Virus record (IMG/VR): IMGVR_UViG_3300042891_000711
Location: 1 to 64,000 of that record
Strand: one strand, 5' to 3'
Length of the DNA stretch: 64,000 nucleotides
In this document: one piece after another, positions 19,568 to 60,936 of the stretch
Layout: every line of letters starts with the position of its first letter
How positions within the stretch are numbered: the stretch's first letter is position 1
The notes under the pieces: model-generated
Told to the model about the DNA's origin: nothing
Seen by the model: the letters and a program-made list of their open reading frames with translations, nothing else
Databases searched by the model: none
Position numbers and translations under genes: made by a program

Positions 19568-20359
19568 ATGAAACATATCGGAATTATAGGCTTTGGTTAT
19601 GTAGGCGGCGCAGTCGCAAGTAGCTATGCCAACGAACGAATATTAATCAACGACCCGTACAAATATCCAGATACTTCAATCAGTTATGAAACACTTATGA
19701 AAAAGTGTCGTGTGATATTTGTCTGCGTACCTACTCCGCAATCGGATGATGGCACCTGCAACACCAGCATATTGGAATCGGTATTACAAGGACTAGTGGG
19801 CTACGATGGTTTGGTAATTTGCAAATGTACAGCACCACCCAATGTATATACAAGACTTGAAACAGACCTAGCTCTTAAACTTGTGCATGTTCCAGAATTT
19901 TTAACACAGGCACGTGCAAAGTATGATTATGTTAATCCACATAAAATAGTAGTTGGCTGTAAGAAAAAGTTACGCGACGAAGTTGCTGAAGTATTAATGG
20001 CCAGTGCTATCAACTTTGACCGTGTTAATATTGAATACTGTGACATTGCCACTGCTAGTTTTTTTAAATATTTTGCTAACAATATGTTGGCCATTAAAGT
20101 TGTATTAAACAATGAGTTTAGTGTATTAGCCAGTGCCTTAGATGTAGAGTGGAATGAAGTTGCTCGTATTGCTGCAACTGACTCAAGACTAGGTAATACA
20201 CATTGGGCAGTGCCTGGTCCAGATGGACAAGCTGGATTTGGCGGAGCATGCTTTCCAAAAGACACTGCGGCATTTGCTACAATGGCAAAACCGTATAATA
20301 TACCGTTGTCTGTACTTGATGCAGCTATACAAGCAAACAAGTTAATGAGGGATGAATAA
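19568..20359 (+). CDS. UDP-glucose/GDP-mannose dehydrogenase family, short form lacking the C-terminal domain
   Basis: GIIGFGYVG, CVPTP, PEFL, GFGGACFPKD; own promoter TAGACA-17-TAAAAT. Confidence 0.85.
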   Translation: MKHIGIIGFGYVGGAVASSYANERILINDPYKYPDTSISYETLMKKCRVIFVCVPTPQSDDGTCNTSILESVLQGLVGYDGLVICKCTAPPNVYTRLETDLALKLVHVPEFLTQARAKYDYVNPHKIVVGCKKKLRDEVAEVLMASAINFDRVNIEYCDIATASFFKYFANNMLAIKVVLNNEFSVLASALDVEWNEVARIAATDSRLGNTHWAVPGPDGQAGFGGACFPKDTAAFATMAKPYNIPLSVLDAAIQANKLMRDE

Positions 20360-20655: not shown

Positions 20656-20679
20656 ACAAAAGCCCTTCGGGGCTTTTGT
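20656..20679 (+). terminator. intrinsic terminator after pqqA
   Basis: ACAAAAGCCC-TTCG-GGGCTTTTGT. Confidence 0.85.
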
Positions 20680-20693
20680 CACGAATACGGGTT

Positions 20694-20759: not shown

Positions 20760-20783
20760 ATAATTTTAATCAAGGAGAAATAA

Positions 20784-23828: not shown

Positions 23829-24986
23829 ATGAAAAATCAAATCAAATCAATTGGATTTGCATTAGACCCCGCAGGAACTCCATCTTTTCTATTAGACTGG
23901 GAACTTACTAAGAAATGTAATTTAGATTGTAGTTATTGTGATATTGGAATCGAAGGTGGTCATGATAATAGTATTCCACACCCGCCATTAGACGAATGTT
24001 TGTCTACAATTGATTTTTTGTATGAGTATGTGGATTTATACATGCAGAACAAAAAACCAACTCAGCGCAAAGTTATATTAAATGTCTACGGGGGCGAAAG
24101 TTTATTTCATCCTGACATTGTTAAAATTTTACAAGCGTGTCACGAAAAACACAATAACTATGCAGATCGATGGCATTTAACCATAACCACTACAACAAAT
24201 GCAGTAATTAATAAAAGCATATGGGCAAAAATTGTACCATTGATAGATGAATTTACGGTTAGTTATCATGCTGAAAATTTACCTAAACAAGAAAAATTGT
24301 TCTTTGATAATCTATTATTATTAAAGTCACATAATAAACGAGTTAAGTGTGTAGTAATGATGCACAATCAATTTGAGTTATGGGGCAAGTCTATTAATAC
24401 AATTGAATTTTGTAAAGACCATGACATCAAACACGTAGCAAAGCCGTTTGATAATGAAGATCTATCATACACCACTGAGCAATTTGATTATTTAAAAAGT
24501 TTTTGGATTAAAAATACACCATCTAAAAATGTTGATAGTTCGACAAAAAATTTAAAAACCATAGGCATTACAGAAAAAGTAGTGAGTATATGCGAAGGCC
24601 GTGCCTGTTGTGGTGGCCGCAAATTATCTTTAAATAATGATTTAAAATCTTCGGTCACTTTTATACCTAGGCAAGGATTTTACGGATGGAGTTGTAGCGT
24701 TAACTGGTTTTTTTTATTTGTTCAACAGGTAACTGGCAATGTTTATTTCAATAAAGATTGTCGTATGTCGTTGAATAATCGAGTTGAACCTATTGGTAAT
24801 TTATCTAATACTGCGGAAATATTAACTACATTGCAAACACAATTCGAGACTAAGTCGATGCCAGTAATACAATGTGCAAAACATCTATGTAAATGTGGGT
24901 ACTGTGCGCCTAAGGCTCATACTATCGAAGATTTTAAAGAATTAATTGCAAGGAATGTTGTGACTGATGTTATTAAATTTGAATAA
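23829..24986 (+). CDS. radical SAM protein
   Basis: CNLDCSYC, GGE, C-terminal Cys-rich auxiliary region. Confidence 0.9.
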   Translation: MKNQIKSIGFALDPAGTPSFLLDWELTKKCNLDCSYCDIGIEGGHDNSIPHPPLDECLSTIDFLYEYVDLYMQNKKPTQRKVILNVYGGESLFHPDIVKILQACHEKHNNYADRWHLTITTTTNAVINKSIWAKIVPLIDEFTVSYHAENLPKQEKLFFDNLLLLKSHNKRVKCVVMMHNQFELWGKSINTIEFCKDHDIKHVAKPFDNEDLSYTTEQFDYLKSFWIKNTPSKNVDSSTKNLKTIGITEKVVSICEGRACCGGRKLSLNNDLKSSVTFIPRQGFYGWSCSVNWFFLFVQQVTGNVYFNKDCRMSLNNRVEPIGNLSNTAEILTTLQTQFETKSMPVIQCAKHLCKCGYCAPKAHTIEDFKELIARNVVTDVIKFE

Positions 24987-28651: not shown

Positions 28652-28873
28652 ATGGAAGTTATACGAGAAGTAACTGAATGGAAGGTTGATTACCGACAGC
28701 CAAACCATGTTTACCTAATGAGTGGCGAACGGGTTATTGGCTATCAAAAATGGGGCGAAGGTCTTCCTATCTACTTCAATCACAAAGCCAAGTTCGACAA
28801 GCGCGGCCGTAAGTTTGTAAAAATTCCTTTAAAAGACAGTGTGTTTAAAGTCGTTGACATTTTAATTAAATGA
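28652..28873 (+). CDS. hypothetical protein
   Basis: ORF from ATG 28652; EVTEW..PNH.Y...FDKRGRKF. Confidence 0.65.
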   Translation: MEVIREVTEWKVDYRQPNHVYLMSGERVIGYQKWGEGLPIYFNHKAKFDKRGRKFVKIPLKDSVFKVVDILIK

Positions 28874-28888
28874 TTGTATAATAATCTT

Positions 28889-29914: not shown

Positions 29915-29941
29915 GTAATCTTGGCCAGTATAAGTAATTGC

Positions 29942-31186
29942 ATGGCCCAAGATTATAATAATAAATTCCCAATAAAAACCAACACTGCATGTCAGAGCAA
30001 ATGGACATGGAGCACTATATGGCTTAATAAAGGTCAGACATCGAGTTGTCATCGAGTTAATAGTGTTCCCTTAGATTCATCAAACTTTGGTAATTTTCAC
30101 AATCTTCCAAAAAAGATTAATGACCGTGAGTTAATGTTAAAAGGTGAGTGGCCCACTGGTGGTTGCGAATACTGTCGAAAAATAGAAGATGCCGGCGGTT
30201 GGAGTGACAGGCAACATAATAATGATATTGGCGGCTATACTCCTAAGGAATTAGTTGATAATCCGTTAGCCACACATGTAACACCGCGTATTGTTGAAAT
30301 ATTTGCCCGCAATACCTGTAATCTTTCCTGCATCTATTGTGCTGAAGATCTAAGTAGTCAAATACAAGCCGAAAATAAAAAATACGGATATGCCAATGGT
30401 GTACCCAAAGTACCTGTTATTAACATCGATCAAAATAATGCATATTTTGATCAATTCTTAGATTGGTTAGATAATAACATACAAGATCTGTCCAGGTTGC
30501 ATTTACTCGGTGGTGAAACATTCATACAACACGACCTTATGGAAAGTGTATTGGGTATTATCGAACGCAGGCCGAACCCCAATTTACAATTAAATATTTT
30601 TAGTAATTTCAATGCACCAGAGAAGCACTGGTATAGTTATATCAATCGTATTAAAGATTACTGTGCATCTGGAAATTTAGGTCGGTTTGATTTAACCTGT
30701 AGCATAGACTGTTGGGGGGCCCAGGCTGAGTATGTGCGCAGTGGATTAAAACTTGATGTGTTAGAAAATTATCTTGCATGGGCCGCAGAACAAAGCGAAG
30801 ATTGGTTATATTTAAATGTTAATCAGACTGTCAGTTCGATGACTATTAAAACTATGCCAGATTTAATTAAAAAAATTAATCAATACAGCAAGCATAGACA
30901 TATAGGACATTATTTTATGTTAGTCGACGGTGACCGATATCATCATCCAGACATATTCGATTATTCGTTATGGGAAGAAGATTTTGTTAATATTTTTAAT
31001 GTTATGAAAACTGAGTCTGCCGAAGATAAAGAAACTCTACAACGAATGATTGGCCTGCAAAAACGTTTACAAAATACCTGTAAAAAAGATCCTATTATAA
31101 TAGGTAAATTACACGCTTACCTAGATGAATTGGATCGCCGCCGTGGCACAGATTGGCGAGCACTGTTTCCTTATCTAATTAACTAG
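29942..31186 (+). CDS. radical SAM protein with N-terminal twitch-like Cys cluster
   Basis: ACQSKW..SSCH..CEYC, CNLSCIYC, GGE. Confidence 0.88.
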   Translation: MAQDYNNKFPIKTNTACQSKWTWSTIWLNKGQTSSCHRVNSVPLDSSNFGNFHNLPKKINDRELMLKGEWPTGGCEYCRKIEDAGGWSDRQHNNDIGGYTPKELVDNPLATHVTPRIVEIFARNTCNLSCIYCAEDLSSQIQAENKKYGYANGVPKVPVINIDQNNAYFDQFLDWLDNNIQDLSRLHLLGGETFIQHDLMESVLGIIERRPNPNLQLNIFSNFNAPEKHWYSYINRIKDYCASGNLGRFDLTCSIDCWGAQAEYVRSGLKLDVLENYLAWAAEQSEDWLYLNVNQTVSSMTIKTMPDLIKKINQYSKHRHIGHYFMLVDGDRYHHPDIFDYSLWEEDFVNIFNVMKTESAEDKETLQRMIGLQKRLQNTCKKDPIIIGKLHAYLDELDRRRGTDWRALFPYLIN

Positions 31187-32296
31187 GGTTTTAAAGATAT
31201 TATCATAGGCTATGGCTTGATCGTTATAGCCTATTTCCTTGAATAGCGACTGACAATTAGCCAGTAGTTCACGATTAATAATATGTTTGAACTCACCGTA
31301 GAAGTGATGGAAATTGTACTCTACGATTGGCGCTATGGCCTCTATAACACGTTGTTTTTCTTCTGCACTTAACGCACAATACCAGGCAATCTGCGCAACA
31401 ACAGCTTCTGTACGTAGATCGTTATCTATAATAGTATCGTAGCTTTCATCTATAATGCCTTCAAAGGTTTTAAAACCATATGATTTTAAATAGGCTAAGT
31501 TACCTGGTGCAGCCAGCAACATAAATGGTTGCTTCATTACAATAGGTTTAAATATCTTTTCTGTTAGATGTAGTTTGTCGTAGTAGAACACTGTTTCTGT
31601 AACTATGTGCCAAAAGCTATCGTTTGTGCATCGTGGGATATCTGCACTAGCACTGCCTAATATATGCTCGTTGTCAATGATTAATGGTGTACTAGGTAGG
31701 TGTAGTTTAATATGGTCAATGGCTCGTTGCGATAACTTTGTATTAACATTTGTAATTTCTTCTTGCCACGGGGCCTGTTCGGTGTCTAATCCAAAACTAA
31801 TTTGTCCGTGCTCTAATAGTAATTCTTCAGCTAGCTTACTAACAAAATAACAACGATAACTACGATCATTTGATACTAGACGATTAAATGTTATATAATC
31901 GTACTTGTAGTCCTTAACCACTTGTTTGTTATAATTTAATGCATAAAATCCTCGATACCAATCAAGCGCGGCAAAACCATGAAAGAAATAATATAACAAA
32001 TTATAATTATGCGTGGAAATTATCTTATCTATTAATGGAGATTTTTCGCTAACAACAAAAGTAATTGTATCTAAAATTTCTAATTTTAATTCTTTAATAA
32101 ATGCCTGCATATTTGTTTCTAATATTGGTTCCTGATCATAGAAAAAAATAGCAGATACGGTATCGATATTAAATACATATAAGTCGGTTAGTGCTCCTAT
32201 TTTAGCAGGTACCACTCCGCCAGGCAATGCAAGTATTGTTTGATCTTTAAAGATAGTAGAATGAAAAAATTCGTAAACATGATCAATTTGGAGCAT
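31175..32296 (-). CDS. putative glycosyltransferase-like protein (GT10-like TEK motif)
   Basis: IVTET...LTEKIFKPI..KQPF...GFKTF..IIDESYD; paralog of 59923-60936. Confidence 0.55.
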   Translation of the reverse strand: MLQIDHVYEFFHSTIFKDQTILALPGGVVPAKIGALTDLYVFNIDTVSAIFFYDQEPILETNMQAFIKELKLEILDTITFVVSEKSPLIDKIISTHNYNLLYYFFHGFAALDWYRGFYALNYNKQVVKDYKYDYITFNRLVSNDRSYRCYFVSKLAEELLLEHGQISFGLDTEQAPWQEEITNVNTKLSQRAIDHIKLHLPSTPLIIDNEHILGSASADIPRCTNDSFWHIVTETVFYYDKLHLTEKIFKPIVMKQPFMLLAAPGNLAYLKSYGFKTFEGIIDESYDTIIDNDLRTEAVVAQIAWYCALSAEEKQRVIEAIAPIVEYNFHHFYGEFKHIINRELLANCQSLFKEIGYNDQAIAYDNIFKTLVN

Positions 32297-32299
32297 TAA

Positions 32300-33544
32300 A
32301 TGTCGTCTCAATTAAAAACAGTAGGATTCGTTGGAATCGGTAAATTAGGTCTTGCGTGTGCGGAAGTAATGGCACAATCATATGCGGTCACTGGCTATGA
32401 TATTTACCCACGTACCAGTGATAAGATAGCAATATCTGATACATTAGAAGGAGCAGTAAAGGGTAAAGATGTTATCTTTGTTGCTGTACAAACACCACAC
32501 GATCCAATCTATGATGGTTCACAACCAATTACACACTTACCAAACAAAGACTTTGATTACACAATTGTAAATCAAGTGTTGGCAGATATTAATCAATATG
32601 TTACACCGGATCAACTTGTAGTGTTAATCAGTACAGTACTGCCTGGCACAACACGTAGAGAACTACGCAAACATATTACCAACGCACGTTTCATCTATAA
32701 CCCATACTTAATTGCTATGGGCAGTGTGGCATGGGATATGGTTAACCCTGACATGATTATTATCGGTACAGAAGATGGTAGTGTAACAGGTGATGCTAAG
32801 TTGCTTACAGACTTTTACGCACCACTAATGCAGAACAATCCGCATACAGCAATTGGTACCTGGGACGAAGCAGAAGCAATTAAAATCTTCTATAATACAT
32901 TTATTTCAACTAAAGTTGGCTTGGTAAACATGATACAAGATGTTGCAGTAAAGAGTGGTAACATTAATGTTGATGTAGTAACTGACGCATTATGTGCGTC
33001 GACTATGCGTATTATTAGTACCAAGTATATGACAGCGGGTATGGGTGATGCCGGGCCGTGTCACCCACGTGATAACATTGCGCTACGTTGGCTGGCTGAA
33101 AATTTAGACCTGGGCTACGATATTTTTAATACAGTTATGCATGCCCGTGAGATACAAGCAAAGAATCTTGCCAAATATCTTAATGATTTACAAGACCTAA
33201 CTGATTTACCTATAGTTATACACGGAAAAGCCTACAAGCCAGATGTGGACCTATTAGATGGTAGTTACAGCCTTTTAATTGGTAGTTATCTAACTGAAAT
33301 GGGTGCAAAATATGTTTATTCTGACCCGTTAACAGGTGATGTTGTTGTTGACGGAACAACTGCTATTGTACTACTGGCACATAATAGACAAATCACCTAC
33401 GGTTACACAGGCACATTTCCAGAGCAACAACTGTATTATAAACTTGGATTAAGCAGTATTGTAGTCGACCCGTGGCGAAAATTTACAACAGATACATCAT
33501 CAATTAAAGTAATACATTATGGTAACACCCGTGGACAAGTTTAA
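32300..33544 (+). CDS. UDP-glucose/GDP-mannose dehydrogenase family
   Basis: GFVGIGKLG, VAVQTP, ISTVLPGT, EAIK, GPCHPRD, GKAYKPD. Confidence 0.9.
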   Translation: MSSQLKTVGFVGIGKLGLACAEVMAQSYAVTGYDIYPRTSDKIAISDTLEGAVKGKDVIFVAVQTPHDPIYDGSQPITHLPNKDFDYTIVNQVLADINQYVTPDQLVVLISTVLPGTTRRELRKHITNARFIYNPYLIAMGSVAWDMVNPDMIIIGTEDGSVTGDAKLLTDFYAPLMQNNPHTAIGTWDEAEAIKIFYNTFISTKVGLVNMIQDVAVKSGNINVDVVTDALCASTMRIISTKYMTAGMGDAGPCHPRDNIALRWLAENLDLGYDIFNTVMHAREIQAKNLAKYLNDLQDLTDLPIVIHGKAYKPDVDLLDGSYSLLIGSYLTEMGAKYVYSDPLTGDVVVDGTTAIVLLAHNRQITYGYTGTFPEQQLYYKLGLSSIVVDPWRKFTTDTSSIKVIHYGNTRGQV

Positions 33545-34034
33545 TATTGAACCATTTTGGGATGATAGTTTTAAACAACTCGACTATTCAGTAGAAGCAT
33601 TTAACAATCCTAACGACACAGCACAATGGATGGAACAAGGCTACCCTGGTAAGTTCACTGGTGCTATGTGCGATATGCGTAAGCCTCAACCCGTTTGGAA
33701 TGCTATGTTTGTTAAATACTTTAATCGTCTTGGATGGAAGGATGTGGGCACTAGTTATTATCGAATGAGCAGTGGTACTATACTACCAGTTCATCGAGAT
33801 ACATATAAAAGATATATAGAACTATTTGACCTTAACGGGCAAGAACATACTATACATCGTGCTATAGTATTCTTGGAACCCTGGGCCAGCGGCCATTATT
33901 TAGAAGTTAATAATGAACCATTTATTAAATGGTCAGTTGGTGATGTAGTAACGTGGTGTTACGATGCACCACACATGGCGGCCAACATGGGATTGACTCC
34001 TAGATACACATTACAAATAACAGGACACGTATGA
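33519..34034 (+). CDS. Fe(II)/2OG oxygenase-like cupin
   Basis: LPVHRD...PHMAAN...RYTLQITG (HxD...H). Confidence 0.7.
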   Translation: MVTPVDKFNIEPFWDDSFKQLDYSVEAFNNPNDTAQWMEQGYPGKFTGAMCDMRKPQPVWNAMFVKYFNRLGWKDVGTSYYRMSSGTILPVHRDTYKRYIELFDLNGQEHTIHRAIVFLEPWASGHYLEVNNEPFIKWSVGDVVTWCYDAPHMAANMGLTPRYTLQITGHV

Positions 34035-34945
34035 AATTAAGCACGAGCAATGAGTGGGGAAAATTAAAGAGTATTATAGTTGGGTCAGCGACACATGCTA
34101 ACTGGCCCAATACCGATCCGGTATTCTCACAGGAACATCTAAAGACAGCCTGGCATGAAACACCAGTGCCTAGTGGCGCAGTGCCGCAATGGATTGTAGA
34201 TGAAGCAAATGAAGATTTAGATGAACTTGCTGGAGTATTAACTAAGTTGGGCATAGAAGTATTCCGTCCACGTGAAATAAACTTTGTTGAACGTGGGGGT
34301 ATGTATAATTACTGTCCACGTGATAGACTATTACTATCAGGAGATTGTGTAATTGATCCAGCTATGATGTATCCGTGTCGTGACCAAGAAATTGAAGCAT
34401 TAGATTTCGTAATGGATGCTGCACGTACAATCTGCCCAATGCCACGCGATCAAGGTTATGTTATGGATGCTGCTAACGTATGCAGACTTGGTGACACTTG
34501 GTTATACCTACTCAGCGACAGTGGAAATCAATTAGCATTAGATTGGTTACGTAAAAAATTACCACACATTAACATAGAAGCATGTAACTTTTATAATGGA
34601 GTGCATATAGACAGTACGATTGTTCCGTTGCGTGAAGGATTTGTTGTACTTAATGCCAGCAGGGTAACACCGGATAATTGCCCTCGAGCCTTTGATGGTT
34701 GGACTAAACTTTGGGTTACTGATGTAGAAGCACAAACATTTCATGAATATCCTTATGCTAGTAAATGGATTGGTTTGAATATGTTGAGCATAGATCCTAA
34801 TACAGTAATTGTTGACCGAGCACAGTATAGACTTATAGAAGACTTGGAACGTGCTGGTTTTGTAACAATTCCGTTACAATTACGACATAGCAGAACACTT
34901 GGCGGTGGATTCCACTGTGTAACACTTGATTTAGTTAGAGATTAG
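34031..34945 (+). CDS. amidinotransferase (glycine/inosamine-phosphate amidinotransferase family)
   Basis: NEWGKLKSIIVG, CPRD, DAAN, HIDST, GGGFHCVTLD (Cys-His-Asp triad). Confidence 0.9.
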   Translation: MKLSTSNEWGKLKSIIVGSATHANWPNTDPVFSQEHLKTAWHETPVPSGAVPQWIVDEANEDLDELAGVLTKLGIEVFRPREINFVERGGMYNYCPRDRLLLSGDCVIDPAMMYPCRDQEIEALDFVMDAARTICPMPRDQGYVMDAANVCRLGDTWLYLLSDSGNQLALDWLRKKLPHINIEACNFYNGVHIDSTIVPLREGFVVLNASRVTPDNCPRAFDGWTKLWVTDVEAQTFHEYPYASKWIGLNMLSIDPNTVIVDRAQYRLIEDLERAGFVTIPLQLRHSRTLGGGFHCVTLDLVRD

Positions 34946-35006
34946 CACAGTCTGTTAATGTGTTTAATTAAGATTTAACTAAATATTTGTAACATTTGGA
35001 TATATC

Positions 35007-35738
35007 ATGACCAATAGCTTCGCAAGCTACACCCAGGCATCACTTAATGCTTTACAATTTAATCTTAAAAGTCAAGATGCGATTAATAAAAAGCAAGAGA
35101 TATTAACCGGTATTGCAGCCTATTATAAATCTAATCCCACAAGTATATTATTTGTTGGGTTCAGTCCATTGATGTTAGGTGTAACTTATAAACAGATATT
35201 TGTCACCAACATAACCGCTGAAACAAAAAATTATCTCGATGCTAGCGACATTAAATACACATATATAGATACAAAGGATTTACCAGGATATAAGAAACAA
35301 TTCTCCTGGGTAGTGGCAGGTGATGAATATTTTACCTTTGCCCGCACTGAAGAAGAGCAACAGACCAGTGTGGAAATAATTGCCAGTCTAGCTAAAGATT
35401 TGATAGTCACAACATTACGTGATTATAAAAATCAAAACTTTAAAGACCGTGAGTTTAGTCAACCACAGGCAGTTTATAATCACAGTGACAGTATGGTATT
35501 TTTAGAATATCACAAGTATGAGTATTCAGATAAGAATGCTTGGGCAACGACGGTATACGAAATGCAGGATGCCAATACAAAGTCATATGGTCCGTTTAGT
35601 CGTCGTGCAATGTTTTTTAAACAGTTGGCAAAGTTTAGTATCGATGCTGGTGCTCGACAATTTTATGTACACAAGGATTTAATGTACAAAAGTCTCATAC
35701 GTAGAAACTATGAGCATGTAATATCAATTTCAATTTAA
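35007..35738 (+). CDS. hypothetical protein, possibly degenerate methyltransferase fold
   Basis: intact ORF; SILFVG followed by an alpha/beta pattern. Confidence 0.5.
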   Translation: MTNSFASYTQASLNALQFNLKSQDAINKKQEILTGIAAYYKSNPTSILFVGFSPLMLGVTYKQIFVTNITAETKNYLDASDIKYTYIDTKDLPGYKKQFSWVVAGDEYFTFARTEEEQQTSVEIIASLAKDLIVTTLRDYKNQNFKDREFSQPQAVYNHSDSMVFLEYHKYEYSDKNAWATTVYEMQDANTKSYGPFSRRAMFFKQLAKFSIDAGARQFYVHKDLMYKSLIRRNYEHVISISI

Positions 35739-35756
35739 AGTTTTTCAAGTGAGTAT

Positions 35757-37025
35757 ATGGATATCAATGAACAATTACAGCCCATTGTCGCCGGGCTAAT
35801 AGACAATCTCAAAGTATCAATTGAGCAAGAACTACATGACAAAGTCAGTGCCGAAGTAATTAAGAAAATTGCCAGTACTGAACTTGATGCAGTAGTTGAT
35901 AGTTTGGTCAAAAAACAAATTGGCGATCGTCTTGACAAATTTAATTTTGCTGATACTAGTAGAGAACAGTTAACTGCGCAGATTGCAAAGATTACAACTG
36001 ATGTTAATAAAACTGTAATTGACAAAGCCAACGTACAGATCACACAAGAAATAAAAAAACAATTAGCCACAATTGATCTTAATTTAATAGTTAACGAAAT
36101 CGTTAAGTCTAAATTACTCGAGCTGATTAAACTACATAATTTTCCAGAGAGAAGTATTGCGCACACTGCTATAAATTTCCAAGGGCTTGGACTATCCGGT
36201 GATGCAATTAACGGTGGTATTATCGAGAACTTTGGCAGTACGGGTATAGAAGACCGCGCTAGTTTTGTACAGCTTACACTCATGGATCACGCCTGTGCAT
36301 TTGAAGGGCCTGTATTTGCACCTAGTGCAAAGATTACAGGTGACTTAACAGTAGATGGCGCACTAACACTCAATGGCACAGTATCAGAAACAAGCCCTGG
36401 ATTTGCACAGTTAGTCGATGCCGCTGGCAGTGCTGTTATTGGTAAACTTGATGCACAGTTGTTCACGGGATTCAGTGATATAGTATTTGGTAGAATACAG
36501 GAAACTGGAATTGACCTAGACAAGATTACCCAAGGCGGTAAGGAAATTGTCAAGGGATCGCAACTAGGCTATCACATTGTCGACAGTAACCTGCAACGTG
36601 TGGGAGTGGTCAAAGATCTTCAGACATCGGGTGAGAACTTACTAAGCGATACACTGTACGTTACACAGCGTAGAGTTGGAGTTAATACTATAGATCCAAG
36701 TGCTGTGTTTGCAGTATGGGATGAAGAAGTTGAACTTATTGTAGCTAAACGTAAAACAGATGTTGCTTATATTGCAACACCACGTAAGCAACAACTAGTA
36801 CTCGGTAGTAACGGCAAAGAAAATATTGTACTTGATACCGATGGTAGTGCGCATATAGAGAACTTAGTAGTGGGCCGTGTTGCAATGACATCGGCCACCG
36901 CAGTGCCAAACTATGCCGGAGAAATGGCACAGATTGTCTATAATGAATTGCCTGCACCAGGTAGTCCTATTGGGTGGGTATGTATTGGCGGATCACGATG
37001 GGCTAAGTTTGGAATGATTGAATAA
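35757..37025 (+). CDS. hypothetical protein (helical N-terminus, beta-rich virion-like C-terminus)
   Basis: long ORF; RVGVNTIDP and PIGWVCIGG motifs typical of fibre proteins. Confidence 0.6.
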   Translation: MDINEQLQPIVAGLIDNLKVSIEQELHDKVSAEVIKKIASTELDAVVDSLVKKQIGDRLDKFNFADTSREQLTAQIAKITTDVNKTVIDKANVQITQEIKKQLATIDLNLIVNEIVKSKLLELIKLHNFPERSIAHTAINFQGLGLSGDAINGGIIENFGSTGIEDRASFVQLTLMDHACAFEGPVFAPSAKITGDLTVDGALTLNGTVSETSPGFAQLVDAAGSAVIGKLDAQLFTGFSDIVFGRIQETGIDLDKITQGGKEIVKGSQLGYHIVDSNLQRVGVVKDLQTSGENLLSDTLYVTQRRVGVNTIDPSAVFAVWDEEVELIVAKRKTDVAYIATPRKQQLVLGSNGKENIVLDTDGSAHIENLVVGRVAMTSATAVPNYAGEMAQIVYNELPAPGSPIGWVCIGGSRWAKFGMIE

Positions 37026-37034
37026 TTAAATAAC

Positions 37035-37637
37035 ATGAATATTGCTATTACTGGGCATGCATCGGGGATAGGCCATGGCTTGTATAATTTCTACAAAAAT
37101 GAAAACTGTACAGGATTTGATTTAACCAATGGATATAATATCAATACTGATATTGATGATATATTAATTAAAAGTCGACACTGTAATATTTTCATCAATA
37201 ATGCTTATAGTAAAAATAAACAAACCGAGCTAGCCATAGCATGGCATAAAATGCATGCAGATGATGATTATTTATTAGTGAACATCAGCAGTACATTTGT
37301 TAATCTGTCCAAAGATGCCCAATTTAAAATAAAATCACCGTGTTTAATGGAATATATTAAATACAAAACAAAATTAAATCAAGCCTCTGAGTTTATTAAC
37401 ATTAGCAATAATAAATGTCGGAGTGTTACAGTCTTAGTTGGATTAACTGATACTCAATTTATCAATAGTTGGGCTACTCAATTTACACCATACGAGTTGG
37501 AGTATTTTACTAAGTTAATTGCAGAATGTAGTCTATTAGAAATTGCCGATGTAGTTGATACTGTGGATTTTGTCATACGGTCTAATAACAATCGAAAGTT
37601 TATATCAAATATATCCTTATCGAATAAAATAGGTTGA
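37035..37637 (+). CDS. short-chain dehydrogenase/reductase
   Basis: IAITGHASGIG, FINNA, NISS, YIKYK (YxxxK). Confidence 0.85.
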   Translation: MNIAITGHASGIGHGLYNFYKNENCTGFDLTNGYNINTDIDDILIKSRHCNIFINNAYSKNKQTELAIAWHKMHADDDYLLVNISSTFVNLSKDAQFKIKSPCLMEYIKYKTKLNQASEFINISNNKCRSVTVLVGLTDTQFINSWATQFTPYELEYFTKLIAECSLLEIADVVDTVDFVIRSNNNRKFISNISLSNKIG

Positions 37638-37695
37638 CAAATACAAATAATTAGCGTATAATACTTACACTATAAAGTTAATAAGGAAATGACAA

Positions 37696-38812: not shown

Positions 38813-39433
38813 ATGTCAACTTTAGTCCCAATGGTAGTAGAACGTACAAGTCAAGGCGAACGTAGCTATGACATTTATTCACGTTTGCTTAAAGATCGTA
38901 TCATCATGTTAGATACAGATGTTAACGAGCATACTGCTAGTTTAATTGTAGCGCAGATGCTGTTCTTAGAAAGCGAAAGCCCAGAGAAAGACATATTGTT
39001 CTATATCAATAGCCCGGGAGGCAGTGTTACAGCAGGTCTAGCTATCTACGATACGATGCAGTTTATTAAATGCGATGTGTCAACTATTGTACTCGGACAA
39101 GCATGTTCAATGGGTAGTTTCCTAGCACAAGCTGGTGCACCAGGCAAGCGTATTGTTCTGCCAGAAGCACGTACAATGATTCACCGTGTTAGTTCGGGTA
39201 CTCCGGGTACACGTGGTTCAGTTCATGTACAAGACCTACAGTTTGAAGATGCTAAACGTAGCTTTGAAGAAAGTGTACGTATTAACAAGCGTTTAACAGA
39301 ACTGTATGCACGCCATAACACTGCTGGTAAAACATATGACGAACTATATGAAGCAATGAAGTTTGATACATTCTTATCAGCAGACGAAGCAGTGGCCTAC
39401 GGTTTAGCTGACGAAGTGATCACTAAACGTTAA
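38813..39433 (+). CDS. clpP: Clp protease proteolytic subunit
   Basis: [39 protein letters not shown]. Confidence 0.95.
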
Positions 39434-40749
39434 TGCTTAAAGATACATTTTGCTCCAGTCCCTGGTTCCATATTAGAATAGATCCTGCGGGTAAATACCT
39501 ACCTTGTCGATGGAGTAGTCACCAAGATACTACAGGTTATACTGTGGCTAACATTACTATTTTAGGATTTATGAACAGTGATATCATGCAAGGTATCCGA
39601 GCTAAGATGTTAGATGGCGAGTCTGTGCCTATGTGTAGTTCATGTCATTATGATGAGTCTAACAATAAAGTAAGTGGTCGGCACCGTCAACTACTTAAAA
39701 GTGCAATTAACGTTGATAATTTTGATAAGACATTTTGCAGCAGTCCGCATTGGCCGATGTTTGAAAATACCTTTGCAAATGCTGAGAATGACAATTATCA
39801 ACCGGTTGATTTTCAAATTGATCTGGGTAATACTTGTAATAGTGCGTGTATTATGTGCTCACCGACTTATAGTAGCAAATTGGCTGCAGAATATCCTAAA
39901 CTAATTAATTTTGAGCCCACGTTATTTAAACAGTCGCAATCTTTTAAGAATTGGGCAGATGATCCGGCTTTGGTAGATAAGTTTGTTAATGAATTGTCAG
40001 CTATTCCTGGTATCAAATACATACATTTCTTAGGTGGCGAGACCCTATACTTAAAAAGTTTTTATGATATCTGCAATCGTTTGATAGAATTAGATCTAGC
40101 TAAAAATATTAGTATAGGTACTACTACTAACTGTACTGTTTACTCTGAAGAGCTTGAATATATTATTCGTAATTTTAAACATGTGCATTTGGGACTTAGT
40201 GTAGAAGCTATACATAACGTTAACGATTATATACGTTACCCTAGCAACATTAAGCAAGTGTCTACAAATATTGCTAGATTTTTACAGTTACGCGAATTAT
40301 ATAATATACAATTGAGCTTGCGCATCACTCCAAACATTTTTAGTATCTATTATTTAGATACTATATTCAAATTGATGCTTACTGAACAAGTTATTGCAGA
40401 AAGTTGTTGGATACTACATAATCCAAGTTGTTTACGTATCGAAGTACTACCTAAAGAATTAATAGCAGTATGTTTAGCTAAAATTAACCAAGTTATCCAA
40501 CAGTATCATTTGGTTCAAGATACTCAGACTATTATTAATCGACGTAGGGAAGATTTAATAGATCCTGTTATCAGCCAGATTATTTTCGAATACAAACATC
40601 TATTAGAAAACGTAATAGTACCCAACAACGTAGAAGAAGAACGCTATAACCTAGTCAAATACATTCGAGCATTTGAGCAAGTACACAATAATACAATTTT
40701 GGATTATCTACCCGAATATGAAGAATTTTTACGAAGCTACGGTTACTAA
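39433..40749 (+). CDS. radical SAM protein with N-terminal twitch/SPASM-like domain
   Basis: FCSSPW..PC..CSSC, CNSACIMC, GGE. Confidence 0.88.
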   Translation: MLKDTFCSSPWFHIRIDPAGKYLPCRWSSHQDTTGYTVANITILGFMNSDIMQGIRAKMLDGESVPMCSSCHYDESNNKVSGRHRQLLKSAINVDNFDKTFCSSPHWPMFENTFANAENDNYQPVDFQIDLGNTCNSACIMCSPTYSSKLAAEYPKLINFEPTLFKQSQSFKNWADDPALVDKFVNELSAIPGIKYIHFLGGETLYLKSFYDICNRLIELDLAKNISIGTTTNCTVYSEELEYIIRNFKHVHLGLSVEAIHNVNDYIRYPSNIKQVSTNIARFLQLRELYNIQLSLRITPNIFSIYYLDTIFKLMLTEQVIAESCWILHNPSCLRIEVLPKELIAVCLAKINQVIQQYHLVQDTQTIINRRREDLIDPVISQIIFEYKHLLENVIVPNNVEEERYNLVKYIRAFEQVHNNTILDYLPEYEEFLRSYGY

Positions 40750-43386: not shown

Positions 43387-44535
43387 ATGACAACATACGC
43401 AGATAAAGCAAACAGTTTTTATAATCAGAAAGAGAGTCACTTTATATCCTTGCGCGAACGATTGGTCGAAAGCCTGGGAGATACTTTCGAACCGTTACTA
43501 GATCGAATTGCTGAAGAATTTAAGCGCAGACATACGCAATGGGAACAATTTACTGATTTACAGATTTGTCAAGCAATTATGGTTCCTATGGACAAAATAT
43601 TAATTGACACTACAATGCAACGTAAAGTAAATCTTCAACATATTTTGAATATTTTGCATTATTTTAAAGAAACAATGATCATGGCTATTCAAGTATATGA
43701 AGATCCAACTCGCCCTGGTTATTATATTGCATGGGACGGGCAACACACGGCCCTTGTACTGTATATCTTAGCAACTAAGGTTTTTGGCCAACGTATTGCT
43801 AATTTAATGGTTCCAGTAGTTGTATACAGTATTAAACAAAAAGCAGATATACGTCGTAACTTTATTTTGCTTAATGGTGATGCCAAAGATCCTTTGGATT
43901 TTATTGATATTTTACGTCAGATGATTTGTGGTGTGCGTATCGATGGTAGCGAGGATAAAATTTGGCAAGCTGCCGAACTTAAACAACGCTATTTGGAGAA
44001 AGCTGGATTATTTGCCACCGATGCCAAGTTTGGTGATGAGAATGAATCTGGAGCATTTACTTTGCTTGCAGATACTTTATGTAGTAAAAGTGACAAGACT
44101 CTCAAAGATCCAGAAGTAACTCGAATGTTTGCAGATTATTGGGTATTAATTAACCAAGCTCGACCAGTTGACGCTAAGGAAGCTAGACAGTTATATGAAT
44201 TTTTTGACGCTTGTTTCCGTGAAAATATTACAGTAGATAATGCGTATCTTAAAGAATTTGCGCAGTTTACATTGGATTATTTTGATGCAGATTTTAATTC
44301 AAAAGGTCCGTTTTGGGATAAAGTAAAAATGGCTTATGATAAATGGTATCGTAAGGCTAATCCAGAAGGCGAATTAGATGAACGCACTGGTGAGATTAAG
44401 ATTAAGGGATTCACAAAAGAATGGAAATGTGGAGGGCCGTTCTTACTAGCTCAATTACGTGCGAGTACTAAATTGCAAGTACCTAATTACGATGCAGACA
44501 GTGATTTTGTTCCAGCTAAAAAGGATCTTTGGTAA
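43387..44535 (+). CDS. ParB/DndB-like DGQH-motif protein
   Basis: IDTTMQR...IQVY...YIAWDGQHT...FILLN; own promoter TTGACA-17-TATAAT. Confidence 0.65.
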   Translation: MTTYADKANSFYNQKESHFISLRERLVESLGDTFEPLLDRIAEEFKRRHTQWEQFTDLQICQAIMVPMDKILIDTTMQRKVNLQHILNILHYFKETMIMAIQVYEDPTRPGYYIAWDGQHTALVLYILATKVFGQRIANLMVPVVVYSIKQKADIRRNFILLNGDAKDPLDFIDILRQMICGVRIDGSEDKIWQAAELKQRYLEKAGLFATDAKFGDENESGAFTLLADTLCSKSDKTLKDPEVTRMFADYWVLINQARPVDAKEARQLYEFFDACFRENITVDNAYLKEFAQFTLDYFDADFNSKGPFWDKVKMAYDKWYRKANPEGELDERTGEIKIKGFTKEWKCGGPFLLAQLRASTKLQVPNYDADSDFVPAKKDLW

Positions 44536-45005
44536 TGGCTAAACTACGTACCCCAGACCAAGATAAACATAAGAATTTTAGGTTACTTACTGCGCAGTTG
44601 CGTACTACACCGGTTTGTAAGTTGGAAGATTGTTGCAACCCACTTAGCGACTATGAAGGACCTGGCAGTGATAGTTTATGCCGAGAACATCAACTTGAGC
44701 AAGTCGAGTATGGTGGAATGGGCAAAGCAAGTCGTCCGCATACATTTTACCGTGCTTGGGTATGCACTAAATGTAAGTACGACGCAAGACTCGATCCTGA
44801 GATTTTAGAAATTGAAGATCCATGGGATCAATTGGTAGTTATGCGCGGAGTGATGCATGGTGACCATTTAATTCGTAAGAGTGATGGCGGCAAGGATACT
44901 AAAGAAAACATCAACGCACTTTGCTGTAGATGTCATATGATTAAAACTTATAAAGAGAAAGATTATCTTAAAGGTAATAAAAATAAATCTACAGAAACCC
45001 GTTGA
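44535..45005 (+). CDS. zinc-binding HNH endonuclease
   Basis: CTKC...HGDHLIRKSDGGKDTKENINALCCRCHMIKT; TAATG-coupled to the upstream gene. Confidence 0.85.
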   Translation: MAKLRTPDQDKHKNFRLLTAQLRTTPVCKLEDCCNPLSDYEGPGSDSLCREHQLEQVEYGGMGKASRPHTFYRAWVCTKCKYDARLDPEILEIEDPWDQLVVMRGVMHGDHLIRKSDGGKDTKENINALCCRCHMIKTYKEKDYLKGNKNKSTETR

Positions 45006-45096: not shown

Positions 45097-47002
<1,906 letters not shown>

Positions 47003-59727: not shown

Positions 59728-59951
59728 TGGGTTCTGGATACATTAATTATTGGGGTAGTATGTGGGACAGCAGTTGGGAATGGCAGTTAACATTTGCTTG
59801 GTTCCCGTGTAGTTTAGACAGCGGTCGTTGGATTTGGTTTAAAAAATATTATCACGGGGTCAGAGTAATACATGGTCCAGGTACCCCAGTTATCTTACAT
59901 CAGTATATGACACCAGAAGAGTTTACTTGGCATCAATTAATACAGTCTTAA
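59727..59951 (+). CDS. hypothetical protein
   Basis: FAWFP...RWIWFKKYY; TGATG coupling. Confidence 0.55.
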   Translation: MGSGYINYWGSMWDSSWEWQLTFAWFPCSLDSGRWIWFKKYYHGVRVIHGPGTPVILHQYMTPEEFTWHQLIQS

Positions 59952-60936
59952 GTTTATTGTGAAATTGTTGTTGCCAGTCAGTTTCGAACATAATCCGTTT
60001 ATTGTGCTCGACTATTTCACATATTTGTTCTAACACATCTGCCTGCGGTACAGTAGTTAAATATTCCATTTGTTTAAATGCTTGTTCAAATCTAGTAGTT
60101 GAATCTTCAATAGTATCATAAGTTTCATCAATAATACCATCAAATGTTTTAAATCCTAAACTGCGAAGATTACGCAGATAGTGTTGCCCGCTAAACACAA
60201 TAAACAATCTTTCTGCTAGTATAGGTTTAACAATCTTCTCAGTATAAAAACTATAATCATTGTCGAAGTTTGTTTCTGCCACAATGCTGTAGGCAGTTTG
60301 ATTATATATGCTGATAGGTACAATAGTACTAATGCTCATTTCGCTATTGTGATATTTAACTTTACCTATACTATGGGTAATCGAGTCAAGTGGAATCATA
60401 TCACTTTCCCAAATAAAATTATCATTGTTAGATAATTCTAAATGCGCAAATTTATAATAGGTCATCACGGATAATTTATCTATGCCTGATGTAATTGCTT
60501 TATTATGTATAAAATCTCTATGCAGTCTTCTGCAGCCTAATAATATATCAAATACTTTTTCTTTAGGCTTGAACGGAGTTAGTTGTGCTAGTGCATCGTG
60601 TTGTTGATAAAACAATCGAGTATTAGTAAACCAATCCATCCAAAGATCCGATTTAACACCACAGACAAATCCACAGGTGAAATATTTTATTTTATCAAAC
60701 TGATAACGCCGCATAAAATCAACAGTAGTTCGATGTAACTCCGATACTAATATAACAACGCAATCACAGTGGATTAATGCTTGACCTACATCAAGTTCAA
60801 AATCAGTATTATATGGAAATGGTACGTGGAATACTGCCTGTGTAGCAAGGGCAATATTGTCAGTTGGTGTGATGTTAAGACAATTTAAATGGTATCGGCA
60901 AACGTCTGAGTTTGTATAAACGCTTGCCGATATCAT
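59923..60936 (-). CDS. putative glycosyltransferase-like protein (GT10-like TEK motif)
   Basis: IVAETNFDNDYSFYTEKIVKPI...GFKTFDGIIDETYD; paralog of 31175-32296. Confidence 0.55.
   Translation of the reverse strand: MISASVYTNSDVCRYHLNCLNITPTDNIALATQAVFHVPFPYNTDFELDVGQALIHCDCVVILVSELHRTTVDFMRRYQFDKIKYFTCGFVCGVKSDLWMDWFTNTRLFYQQHDALAQLTPFKPKEKVFDILLGCRRLHRDFIHNKAITSGIDKLSVMTYYKFAHLELSNNDNFIWESDMIPLDSITHSIGKVKYHNSEMSISTIVPISIYNQTAYSIVAETNFDNDYSFYTEKIVKPILAERLFIVFSGQHYLRNLRSLGFKTFDGIIDETYDTIEDSTTRFEQAFKQMEYLTTVPQADVLEQICEIVEHNKRIMFETDWQQQFHNKLKTVLIDAK

What the first reader, a model, noticed from the sequence alone, without database searches (positions are those of the whole stretch)
29942..37637. 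Biosynthetic-looking cluster centred on an amidinotransferase
Seen: rSAM, GT10-like protein, NDP-sugar dehydrogenase, HxD..H oxygenase and amidinotransferase (the last three overlapping), then an unknown, a virion-like protein and an SDR. Elsewhere in the window are a second NDP-sugar dehydrogenase, a cytidylyltransferase, an SGNH-like protein and a second GT10-like gene. Known: amidinotransferases move the amidino group of Arg to amines (glycine, inosamine-phosphate). Inference: a pathway for a guanidinylated sugar or small amine used to decorate virions, host surface or DNA. I know of no characterised phage example.
Basis: partly seen in the sequence, partly recalled or inferred. Interest (0 to 1): 0.65.

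Follow-up and report, generated by a model that had tools for sequence, protein, structure and literature searches.

The report
Phage operon for a guanidino sugar
A lake-water jumbo phage carries a conserved, phage-only enzyme set (sugar dehydrogenase, oxygenase, arginine amidinotransferase, glycosyltransferase, radical SAM enzyme) whose gene fusions and repeated gene order in other phages suggest it makes and attaches a sugar bearing a guanidino group. No such sugar pathway has been characterised in a virus.

Summary
At 29.9-37.6 kb there are a twitch-type radical SAM gene, a GT-B glycosyltransferase with a GT10-like motif (minus strand), an NDP-sugar 6-dehydrogenase (DH), a small HxD..H oxygenase (OX) and a StrB1-type amidinotransferase (AT). 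DH, OX and AT overlap. The "unknown" has a TylM1-like methyltransferase fold. The "virion-like" protein stays unassigned. The "SDR" is weak and not conserved.

The grouping is not chance. In 80 related viral contigs, with enough flank, OX is beside AT in 79/79, GT in 70/73 and DH in 64/73. Twelve distant contigs fetched with an OX-GT fusion, not with AT, all read DH - GT - rSAM - short DegT-like PLP enzyme - AT - OX/GT, mostly followed by a carbamoyltransferase. Fusions DH-GT, OX-GT, GT-OX-GT and DegT-OX tie the enzymes to one pathway. This genome carries the short DegT and the carbamoyltransferase elsewhere.

Best reading (about 0.5): a sugar is oxidised at C6, a hydroxyl is oxidised, aminated, then amidinated from arginine, and the GT transfers the sugar. 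This parallels streptidine (StsC, StrB1) and WbpA/B/E/D chemistry. The acceptor (host envelope, virion protein or DNA) is unresolved, and no product has been shown. I found no characterised phage example.

The parts
28854..28882 (+). Perfect sigma-70 consensus promoter-like site (TTGACA-N17-TATAAT) upstream of the plus-strand genes of the module
   Evidence: 7 perfect sites in the window, all on the + strand, against 0.11 expected. This one and the site at 37634 bracket the cluster.
29921..31186 (+). Twitch-domain radical SAM enzyme (probable true start is the ATG at 29942)
   Evidence: NF033640 at 205 bits (cut-off 170). CxxxCxxC motif plus an N-terminal Cys cluster. It is not syntenic within the window's own clade, but rSAM genes sit in the same operon in other lineages.
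31175..32311 (-). GT-B fold glycosyltransferase with a GT10-like nucleotide-sugar motif, transcribed divergently from the dehydrogenase
   Evidence: Model pLDDT 81. All top Foldseek and VIA hits are GT-B enzymes. Present in 70/73 related loci. Its C-terminal domain is fused to OX or DH in other phages.
32300..33544 (+). NDP-sugar 6-dehydrogenase (UDP-glucose dehydrogenase family), catalytic Cys retained
   Evidence: Present in 64/73 related loci. It is 57% identical to the N-terminal domain of a DH-GT fusion in L110.
33519..34034 (+). Small cupin, probably an Fe(II)/2-oxoglutarate oxygenase (AspH-like); H92-x-D94...H152 with R162
   Evidence: Present in 79/79 related loci. Homologue adjacent to AT in cyanophage S-SCSM2R. 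Fusions to GT and to a short DegT-like enzyme.
34031..34945 (+). StrB1-type L-arginine amidinotransferase (pentein fold); D98, D146, H192, D194 and C296 conserved
   Evidence: 1bwd 7e-59; HsvA, AGAT and SxtG at 1e-21 to 1e-25. (invariant columns)..
35007..35738 (+). Class I methyltransferase-fold protein of the TylM1/DesVI (aminosugar N-methyltransferase) architecture. Motif I is VGFSP rather than GxGxG
   Evidence: Model pLDDT 92.5. Foldseek 4e-11, TM 0.64-0.69. Atlas features 0.93 to class I MTases. Present in 43/69 related loci. Not seen in the distant clades.
35757..37025 (+). 422-aa protein of unknown function (helical N-terminus by composition, conserved C-terminal two thirds), the 'virion-like' gene
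   Evidence: No Pfam, PHROG, PDB or GenBank-phage match. Directly downstream of AT or MT in 56/69 loci. Absent from the distant clades.
37035..37637 (+). Short SDR-like protein; probably co-transcribed here but not a conserved member
   Evidence: NCBIfam SDR E = 0.039. Motifs read. Found in 0/80 related loci. One paralogue at G000 208824-209348.
37634..37662 (+). Second perfect sigma-70 consensus promoter-like site, marking the start of the next unit
59923..60936 (-). Paralogue of the GT-B glycosyltransferase
   Evidence: hhalign probability 99.6%, E = 5e-24.
19568..20359 (+). Second NDP-sugar dehydrogenase. It is truncated after the catalytic Cys motif and lacks the C-terminal nucleotide-binding domain

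Best explanation
The cluster is the local copy of a widespread, phage-only pathway that tailors and transfers a nucleotide sugar.

**Shown:**
- the enzyme families and their catalytic residues;
- that DH, OX, AT and GT are inherited as a block in this phage clade;
- that in distant phages DH, GT, an rSAM enzyme, a short DegT-like PLP enzyme, AT, OX/GT and a carbamoyltransferase form one colinear operon;
- that DH-GT, OX-GT, GT-OX-GT and DegT-OX occur as single polypeptides.

**Inferred chemistry:**
1. DH oxidises C6 of an NDP-hexose to the uronic acid.
2. OX (and/or the twitch rSAM enzyme) oxidises a ring hydroxyl to a ketone.
3. The short DegT-like enzyme, encoded at G000 128130-128714 in this genome, transaminates the ketone.
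4. The StrB1-like AT moves the amidino group of L-arginine onto the new amine through its Cys296 thiouronium intermediate, releasing ornithine.
5. Optional steps follow: the TylM1-like protein here, and the carbamoyltransferase at G000 159420-160910.
6. The GT-B enzyme(s) attach the sugar to a macromolecular acceptor.

The order of glycosyl transfer and tailoring, the identity of the sugar and the acceptor are not known. The two perfect sigma-70 sites that flank the unit suggest transcription by host RNA polymerase. That favours an intracellular or host-envelope target over late virion decoration, but only weakly.
For: **Family assignments**
- AT matches StrB1 at 7e-59 with the catalytic residues kept.
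- DH has its catalytic Cys.
- OX has an invariant HxD..H+R, and 12/27 members hit Asp_Arg_Hydrox.
- GT has a GT-B fold.
- The MT-like protein has a fold nearest the aminosugar N-methyltransferases TylM1/DesVI.

**Synteny in 80 loci**
- OX 79/79, GT 70/73, DH 64/73, while the flanking genes vary.

**Independent clades**
- S-SCSM2R reads short DegT - rSAM - GT - OX - AT - GT2.
- L091, L094 and L098/L099 read short DegT - AT - OX(/GT).
- Nine loci fetched with a distant AT carry DH, short DegT, OX, GT and rSAM around it.
- Twelve of 12 loci fetched with an OX-GT fusion carry DH - GT - rSAM - short DegT - AT - OX/GT, and 10/12 add a carbamoyltransferase.

**Fusions**
- OX-GT and GT-OX-GT; DegT-OX; DH-GT.

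**Same genome**
- It encodes the short DegT with its Schiff-base Lys, a full DegT, an epimerase/dehydratase and a carbamoyltransferase.
- All five large relatives tested also carry a DegT-family gene.

**Phage-restricted**
- Only 5 hits in about 185,000 species' genomes. Four of these are phage contigs inside MAGs.

**Established precedents (my own knowledge)**
- Streptidine: oxidation, then the StsC DegT-family aminotransferase, then StrB1.
- UDP-ManNAc3NAcA: WbpA 6-dehydrogenase, WbpB 3-oxidation, WbpE transamination, then N-capping.
Against: - No product, substrate or acceptor has been observed. Everything beyond family assignment and linkage is inference.
- OX belongs, weakly, to the AspH family, whose best-known members hydroxylate proteins or lipid A rather than sugars.
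- In this genome the short DegT and the carbamoyltransferase lie 94-125 kb from AT, so they are linked to it only by analogy with other phages.
- The short DegT lacks about half of a normal DegT, so its activity is uncertain.
- The MT-like protein lacks a canonical SAM motif I and an acidic residue after strand 2.
- StrB1's own acceptor is an aminocyclitol phosphate, not an NDP-sugar.
- Campylobacter phages have AT with rSAM and GT-A genes but no detectable OX or short DegT.
Confidence: 0.5

Rival explanations
1. Hydroxylate-then-glycosylate modification of a protein. OX acts like AspH or a lysyl hydroxylase on a residue of a phage or host protein (possibly the 422-aa neighbour). The fused or adjacent GT glycosylates the new hydroxyl. 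DH, DegT, AT and the carbamoyltransferase only tailor the sugar, or AT converts lysines to homoarginine.
For: - OX's only family signal is Asp_Arg_Hydrox.
- OX-GT fusions mirror bifunctional collagen lysyl hydroxylase/glycosyltransferases (LH3, Mimivirus L230; my own knowledge).
- The 422-aa protein follows AT or MT in 56/69 loci.
- In S-SCSM2R a second AT and a 2OG oxygenase were detected in purified virions (PMC12801897).
Against: - The DegT-OX fusion is easier to explain if OX acts on the sugar.
- The 422-aa protein is absent from all distant clades that keep the enzyme set.
- There is no evidence that the 422-aa protein is in virions.
Confidence: 0.2
2. DNA hypermodification. OX hydroxylates a methylpyrimidine in phage DNA (as JBP or TET do), the GT-B enzyme glycosylates it (as T4 beta-GT or JGT do), and the remaining enzymes give the sugar a cationic guanidino group.
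For: - The top structural matches of the GT include both T4 DNA glucosyltransferases (Z 11.3 and 10.4).
- Phage clusters of an oxygenase, a GT-B enzyme and sugar-nucleotide enzymes are known to glycosylate 5hmC (bioRxiv 10.1101/2023.12.21.572611).
- The module occurs in unrelated phage lineages, and packaged DNA is one acceptor common to all of them.
Against: - OX gives no Tet_JBP or AlkB signal.
- No TET/JBP hit was found in five genomes, though the control was silent.
- There is a single ordinary ThyA next to DHFR, and one complete relative has the module but no ThyA-family gene.
- GT and OX are acidic, with median pI 5.7-5.8.
- The T4 GT matches tie with a fucosyltransferase and many other GT-B enzymes.
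Confidence: 0.1
3. A free small guanidino metabolite: an aminocyclitol of streptidine type, a creatine-like N-methylguanidino compound or an antibiotic. It would act as an auxiliary metabolic function, as proposed for S-SCSM2R.
For: - AT is closest to StrB1 of streptomycin biosynthesis.
- AT followed by a methyltransferase-fold protein recalls AGAT followed by GAMT.
- Viral GAMT-like genes have been reported (PMC11360552).
- The S-SCSM2R authors called these 'antibiotic synthesis genes'.
Against: - One or two GTs and a nucleotide-sugar dehydrogenase are the most constant partners and are fused to OX and to each other.
- No inositol-phosphate synthase, kinase or exporter was seen in the loci examined.
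- The MT-like gene is missing from the distant clades.
Confidence: 0.12
4. Unrelated accessory genes that happen to be neighbours in a variable region.
For: - The flanks are highly variable.
- The rSAM and the SDR-like gene are not syntenic within the window's own clade.
Against: - The same set recurs at 30-38% identity in several lineages, with different orders and with four kinds of fusion.
Confidence: 0.02

Closest known systems
Streptidine branch of streptomycin biosynthesis (StsC aminotransferase plus StrB1 amidinotransferase, Streptomyces griseus)
   Same: - The AT is most similar to StrB1 (E = 7e-59) and keeps its catalytic residues.
- A DegT/StrS-family PLP enzyme is its constant neighbour in other phages.
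- The logic is the same: hydroxyl to ketone to amine to guanidine.
   Different: - The phage AT is about 40 residues shorter (304 aa against 348), with a deletion between residues 120 and 140.
- The oxidant would be a 2OG oxygenase and/or an rSAM enzyme rather than an NAD dehydrogenase.
- The partners are a nucleotide-sugar dehydrogenase and GT-B enzymes, not cyclitol enzymes.
- The acceptor is unknown.
WbpA/WbpB/WbpE/WbpD(/WbpG) pathway to UDP-2,3-diamino-uronic acids in Pseudomonas and Bordetella O-antigens
   Same: The order of chemistry would be the same: 6-dehydrogenation, ring oxidation, DegT-type transamination, N-capping, then glycosyl transfer. This rests on my own knowledge of that pathway plus the gene sets seen.
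   Different: - N-capping would be amidination from arginine by a pentein enzyme, rather than acetylation or acetamidino formation.
- The oxidation enzyme belongs to another family.
- The DegT is a truncated, roughly 195-aa form.
Campylobacter phage CP220/CPt10 'radical SAM plus glycine amidinotransferase' module (Timms et al. 2010, PMC2853527)
   Same: A phage-borne pentein amidinotransferase (24-26% identity) sits among rSAM genes and two glycosyltransferase-like genes. It was described as an interchangeable module of unknown function.
   Different: - No detectable OX homologue: gp085 against the OX profile gives probability 0.6%.
- No short DegT or A1-type GT.
- It has five rSAM genes instead.
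Synechococcus phage S-SCSM2R ORF305-310 (PMC12801897)
   Same: Short DegT ('AHBA synthase'), rSAM, GT, an OX homologue (hhalign 99.6%) and AT (34% identity) lie in one run. This is the only cultured phage found to carry the OX-AT pair.
   Different: - It is a T4-like cyanophage.
- Its GTs are not of the A1 family.
- The published annotation calls them antibiotic-synthesis genes, without any test.
Phage DNA glycan hypermodification clusters (5mYOX/TET plus GT) and base J (JBP plus JGT)
   Same: An oxygenase is paired or fused with a glycosyltransferase and accompanied by sugar-nucleotide enzymes. The GT-B fold resembles T4 beta-GT.
   Different: - OX is not of the TET/JBP family.
- There is no adjacent C5-methyltransferase or hydroxymethylase.
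- The proteins are acidic.

Membership tests
Amidinotransferase (pentein superfamily, StrB1/AGAT type) | Significant sequence similarity to characterised amidinotransferases over the whole chain | tested here: met
   phmmer against PDB: StrB1 7e-59, HsvA 4e-25, AGAT 2e-23, SxtG 7e-21. Pfam-A itself gave no hit at E <= 0.01.
Amidinotransferase (pentein superfamily, StrB1/AGAT type) | Catalytic Cys-His-Asp plus the substrate-binding Asp residues (StrB1 C332, D179 and the HxD motif) | tested here: met
   C296 lies in the GGGFHC motif. D146, H192/D194 and D98 align to the StrB1 motifs and are invariant in 27 homologues.
Amidinotransferase (pentein superfamily, StrB1/AGAT type) | Transfer of the amidino group from L-arginine to an amine acceptor | not testable with these tools
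   Needs an enzyme assay.
UDP-glucose/GDP-mannose dehydrogenase family | N-terminal NAD domain, central domain with catalytic Cys, C-terminal nucleotide-sugar domain | tested here: met
   PF03721 at 57 bits and PF00984 at 58 bits, both above cut-off. PF03720 is only 20 bits against a cut-off of 30. Cys in GPCHPRD. UDP-Glc dehydrogenases at 3e-19 in PDB. Sugar specificity is not assignable: all NCBIfam equivalog scores are far below their cut-offs.
Fe(II)/2-oxoglutarate oxygenase (Asp_Arg_Hydrox, PF05118) | Score above the Pfam gathering threshold | tested here: not met
   17.3 bits against 22.6. 12 of 27 homologues match, with best E = 2.7e-4.
Fe(II)/2-oxoglutarate oxygenase (Asp_Arg_Hydrox, PF05118) | HxD/E...H metal triad and a basic residue about 10 positions after the distal His for the 2OG carboxylate | tested here: met
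   H92, D94, H152 and R162 are invariant in 27 sequences.
Glycosyltransferase family GT10 (alpha1,3/4-fucosyltransferases) | Match to PF00852 (Glyco_transf_10) | tested here: not met
   No Pfam hit in any of 25 homologues at E <= 0.1. Atlas feature scores to GT10 clusters are only 0.77-0.78.
Glycosyltransferase family GT10 (alpha1,3/4-fucosyltransferases) | GT-B fold with the C-terminal FucT motif (..EN.. / ..TEK..) | tested here: inconclusive
   The GT-B fold is clear. Z = 10.4 to H. pylori FucT, but it ties with T4 BGT (11.3) and T4 AGT (10.4). An invariant E239/T240 and L249-E251-K252 resemble the motif.
Radical SAM, twitch-domain subfamily (NF033640) | Score above the curated cut-off and a CxxxCxxC cluster | tested here: met
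   205 bits against 170. A C-x3-C-x2-C motif and extra N-terminal cysteines are present.
Class I SAM-dependent methyltransferase (TylM1/DesVI-like) | Rossmann-like MTase fold with a C-terminal lid | tested here: met
   Foldseek E = 4e-11, probability 1.0, TM 0.64-0.69 to 1wzn, TylM1, DesVI, CalS10 and CypM. Model pLDDT 92.5.
Class I SAM-dependent methyltransferase (TylM1/DesVI-like) | GxGxG SAM-binding motif I and an acidic residue after strand 2 | tested here: not met
   Motif I reads VGFSP, and no conserved acidic residue follows strand 2. No Pfam MTase hit in 26 homologues.
Short-chain dehydrogenase/reductase (the 200-aa gene) | Family-level score plus TGxxxGxG, NNAG and YxxxK motifs | tested here: inconclusive
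   NCBIfam SDR E = 0.039 and no Pfam SDR hit. Motif-like strings are present in the translation.

The most novel reading that the evidence does not exclude
OX and the GT-B enzyme act on the phage's own DNA, as JBP/JGT or the TET-GT pairs do. OX would hydroxylate a methylpyrimidine, and the GT would attach a uronic sugar that is then aminated and amidinated. The result would be a DNA base carrying a cationic guanidino sugar, a new class of DNA hypermodification shared by freshwater jumbo phages and marine T4-like phages.
Probability: 0.1. Interest if true: 0.9.

Novelty: new variant of a known kind. Interest (0 to 1): 0.62.

Why it matters
If the inference is right, phages encode their own route to a guanidino, probably zwitterionic, uronic sugar. 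I know of no such sugar in phage biology, and it would be rare in glycobiology generally.

The OX family alone has 4,767 sequence clusters at 90% identity in public metagenomes. The window's stretch is present in at least 18 lake-water runs. The module is therefore abundant in nature yet essentially absent from cellular genomes.

It offers:
- a defined, testable enzyme set, including natural fusions convenient for biochemistry;
- a cultured handle, Synechococcus phage S-SCSM2R;
- a possible explanation for the long-unexplained 'rSAM plus amidinotransferase' module of Campylobacter phages.

Whatever the target is (host envelope, virion or DNA), it bears on how large phages alter surfaces or evade defences.

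Tried and rejected
- **Complex prediction** of AT with OX: no verdict (score 0.28, mark 0.32). This is not evidence either way.
- **Profile searches of PDB sequences** with the GT, OX, MT-like and 422-aa alignments: nothing significant.
- **Pfam scans of all members** of the GT and MT-like alignments: only scattered chance hits.
- **PHROG scan of the 422-aa family:** no consistent family.
- **tblastn of the GT and the 422-aa protein against 50,697 GenBank phages:** no match.
- **CP220 gp085 as an OX homologue:** rejected.
- **S-SCSM2R ORF307 as an A1-type GT:** rejected.
- **C-terminal 244 aa of the L110 DH-GT fusion as a homologue of the MT-like protein:** rejected, probability 1.8%.
- **Tet_JBP search of five genomes:** no hits, but the control genomes were also silent, so this is uninformative.
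- **PDB searches** of the 872-aa protein next to DegT, the 405-aa protein upstream of the short DegT, and the 274-aa window ORF: empty.
- **The look-up of encoding contigs** for the L110 fusion: not on record.
- **Word-based homologue search with the OX profile:** returned only close, unnamed relatives in its top 120.

Full report
**Source.** The window is the first 64 kb of an IMG/VR virus record of 218,902 bp, estimated 62% complete. Its relatives are 289-364 kb phages, two of them with terminal repeats. The examined stretch occurs almost identically in at least 18 lake-water metagenome runs. A contig from an independent run covers DH-OX-AT (32548-34834) without a single difference. The window also encodes DnaK, GroEL, ClpP, curli-secretion proteins and a porin. 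This is a freshwater jumbo phage of a Gram-negative-type host with no cultured relative.

**The genes.**
- 29921/29942-31186 (+) is a twitch-domain radical SAM enzyme: NF033640 at 205 bits against a cut-off of 170, with a CxxxCxxC motif.
- 31175-32311 (-) has no Pfam match. It folds with pLDDT 81 as a GT-B glycosyltransferase. Its best Z-scores are tied between T4 beta-glucosyltransferase (11.3), H. pylori alpha1,3-fucosyltransferase (10.4) and T4 alpha-glucosyltransferase (10.4). An invariant ..TE.. / LTEK pair recalls the GT10 motif. 'GT10-like' is therefore a fair resemblance, but family membership is not shown.
- 32300-33544 (+) is an NDP-sugar 6-dehydrogenase with its catalytic Cys. Its sugar specificity cannot be assigned.
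- 33519-34034 (+) is a 171-aa cupin. Its only family signal is a sub-threshold Asp_Arg_Hydrox hit. H92, D94, H152 and R162 are invariant in 27 homologues, which is the pattern of an Fe(II)/2-oxoglutarate oxygenase.
- 34031-34945 (+) is an amidinotransferase. It matches StrB1 at E = 7e-59, and the Asp, His and Cys residues of the catalytic apparatus align and are invariant.
- DH/OX overlap by 26 nt and OX/AT by 4 nt.
It lacks the canonical SAM motifs.
- 35757-37025 (+) remains unassigned.
- 37035-37637 (+) is SDR-like only by motifs and a weak hit.

**Transcription.** The window holds seven perfect TTGACA-N16-18-TATAAT sites, all on the + strand, against 0.11 expected. Two of them, at 28854 and 37634, bracket the cluster. 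The plus-strand genes from UvdE to the SDR-like gene therefore look like one host-polymerase transcription unit, with the GT antisense inside it.

**Is the grouping meaningful?** A scan of viral contigs with the AT returned 80 loci at 55-94% identity. Counting only loci with enough flank:

| Partner | Loci with it |
|---|---|
| OX upstream of AT | 79/79 |
| GT | 70/73 |
| DH | 64/73 |
| 422-aa gene | 56/69 |
| MT-like gene | 43/69 |

The surrounding genes (UvdE, lipase, DUF4337, cyclase and others) change position or vanish. The rSAM and the SDR-like gene are not syntenic within this clade. Because these phages are related, this alone could reflect shared descent, so I looked further away.

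**Distant relatives and fusions.**
- A profile of OX found 923 cluster representatives. Among them are natural fusions:
  - OX with a C-terminal domain homologous to the window's GT (seven proteins of 522-595 aa; hhalign 99.2% for P0159);
  - a GT-OX-GT protein of 1018 aa;
  - a short DegT-like PLP enzyme fused to OX.
- The contexts of these proteins repeat one pattern: short DegT, then AT (32-34% identical to the window's), then OX, free or fused to GT. This is seen in L091, L094 and L098/L099. L097 carries the same genes in another order.
- The cultured cyanophage S-SCSM2R has short DegT - rSAM - GT - OX - AT - GT2.
- A scan with a distant AT gave nine loci that also carry DH (46-63% identical to the window's), and most of which carry short DegT, OX, GT and a twitch rSAM.
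- The cleanest test was a scan with an OX-GT fusion, that is, not with AT. All 12 loci are colinear: DH - GT - rSAM - short DegT - AT - OX/GT. Ten of the 12 are followed by a carbamoyltransferase.
- In L110 the DH (57% identical over its whole length) is itself fused to an A1-type GT domain in a 1039-aa protein.
- The window's genome holds the missing partners at a distance: a 194-aa short DegT with its Schiff-base lysine at 128130-128714, a carbamoyltransferase at 159420-160910, and a full DegT with an epimerase/dehydratase at 151.8-153.8 kb.
- The OX family is nearly absent from about 185,000 species' genomes. There were five hits, and four of them lie on phage contigs binned into MAGs.

**Mechanism.** The set is a 6-dehydrogenase, an oxidant (2OG oxygenase and/or twitch rSAM), a DegT-family aminotransferase, an N-capping enzyme and glycosyltransferases. 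This is the logic of two established pathways that I cite from my own knowledge:
- the streptidine branch of streptomycin, where a DegT-family aminotransferase (StsC) and StrB1 act in succession;
- the WbpA/B/E/D route to 2,3-diamino-uronic acids.

I therefore propose that a ring hydroxyl of a uronic sugar is converted through a ketone and an amine into a guanidino group. Arginine would be the donor, with optional N-methylation or carbamoylation. The GT-B enzymes would install the sugar on a polymer. The DegT-OX and OX-GT fusions fit consecutive steps. Only the family assignments, conserved residues, linkage and fusions are shown. The substrates, the order of steps and the acceptor are inferred.

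**Target.** The 422-aa neighbour is confined to the window's clade, so it is not the general acceptor.

A DNA target cannot be excluded, given the T4 GT-like fold and known oxygenase-plus-GT DNA glycosylation. It lacks support for these reasons:
- OX shows no TET/JBP-type signal;
- there is a single ordinary ThyA next to DHFR;
- one complete relative has no ThyA-family gene at all;
- GT and OX are acidic.

A protein target, by AspH-like hydroxylation followed by glycosylation, is the main rival. A free small metabolite is less likely because the GTs and DH are the most constant partners.

**Literature.** Papers in the searchable library mention phage amidinotransferases only as annotations:
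- the CP220/CPt10 'rSAM plus amidinotransferase' interchangeable module (PMC2853527);
- S-SCSM2R 'antibiotic synthesis genes' (PMC12801897);
- tables of auxiliary metabolic genes.

None characterises the enzyme or recognises the wider operon.

**Verdict.** The finding is a new variant of a known kind, a virus-encoded nucleotide-sugar tailoring and transfer pathway. It is distinguished by an arginine amidinotransferase, a phage-specific oxygenase and unusual fusions. Product and target remain to be shown.

Noticed in passing
window 10580-14987: A phage-borne curli-type (type VIII) secretion set: CsgF (10580-11077), CsgG (11077-11943), two curlin-repeat proteins (one with a PA14 domain) and a FecR-domain protein. 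One homologue of the GT family also gave a CsgE hit.
   Followed up: no
window 4850-6766, 38813-39433, 45365-47002: The phage encodes its own DnaK/Hsp70 (844 bits), ClpP and a GroEL-type chaperonin.
   Followed up: no
window 28854, 37634, 43328, 54121, 56137, 58738, 61268: Seven perfect sigma-70 consensus promoters (TTGACA-N16-18-TATAAT), all on the + strand, against 0.11 expected. Several carry an extended TG -10 element.
   Followed up: partly
window 23829-24986, 29921-31186, 39433-40749, 52998-54140; G000 163383-169977 and 209338-210459: Many radical SAM paralogues, mostly of the N-terminal twitch type, including four consecutive genes at 163-170 kb. This recalls the 11-12 rSAM genes of Campylobacter phages.
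   Followed up: partly
window 19568-20780: The second NDP-sugar dehydrogenase stops right after its catalytic Cys motif, and about 420 nt full of stop codons follow. It is either a truncated gene or a remnant.
   Followed up: partly
window 21801-23825 and 18066-19493: A CHASE2-sensor adenylate/guanylate cyclase and a phosphate-selective porin O/P are encoded by the phage.
   Followed up: no
window 646-2788: A GLEYA/PA14 adhesin-like protein and a collagen-repeat protein with a BclA-like C-terminal domain. These are candidate surface or fibre proteins that could be glycosylation targets.
   Followed up: no
window 8870-9757 (-) and 44529-45005: Two HNH endonuclease genes, probably homing endonucleases. 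One carries a NUMOD3 motif.
   Followed up: no
L100 (S-SCSM2R 213353-216336): S-SCSM2R has a second, more distant pair of an amidinotransferase and a 2OG oxygenase (ORF266/267, plus ORF269) next to KdsA/KdsB. ORF266 and ORF269 were reported in the virion proteome.
   Followed up: partly
L110 14-3133: The DH-GT fusion carries a further 260-aa C-terminal domain with a GxGxG-like string. It is not detectably related to the window's MT-like protein. Downstream of about 10.7 kb this locus has very few ORFs of 70 aa or more.
   Followed up: partly
L088 (Neomarinimicrobiota MAG contig, 335 kb): This is the only OX homologue found on a long, possibly cellular contig. No AT, DH or GT homologue lies within 10 kb.
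   Followed up: no
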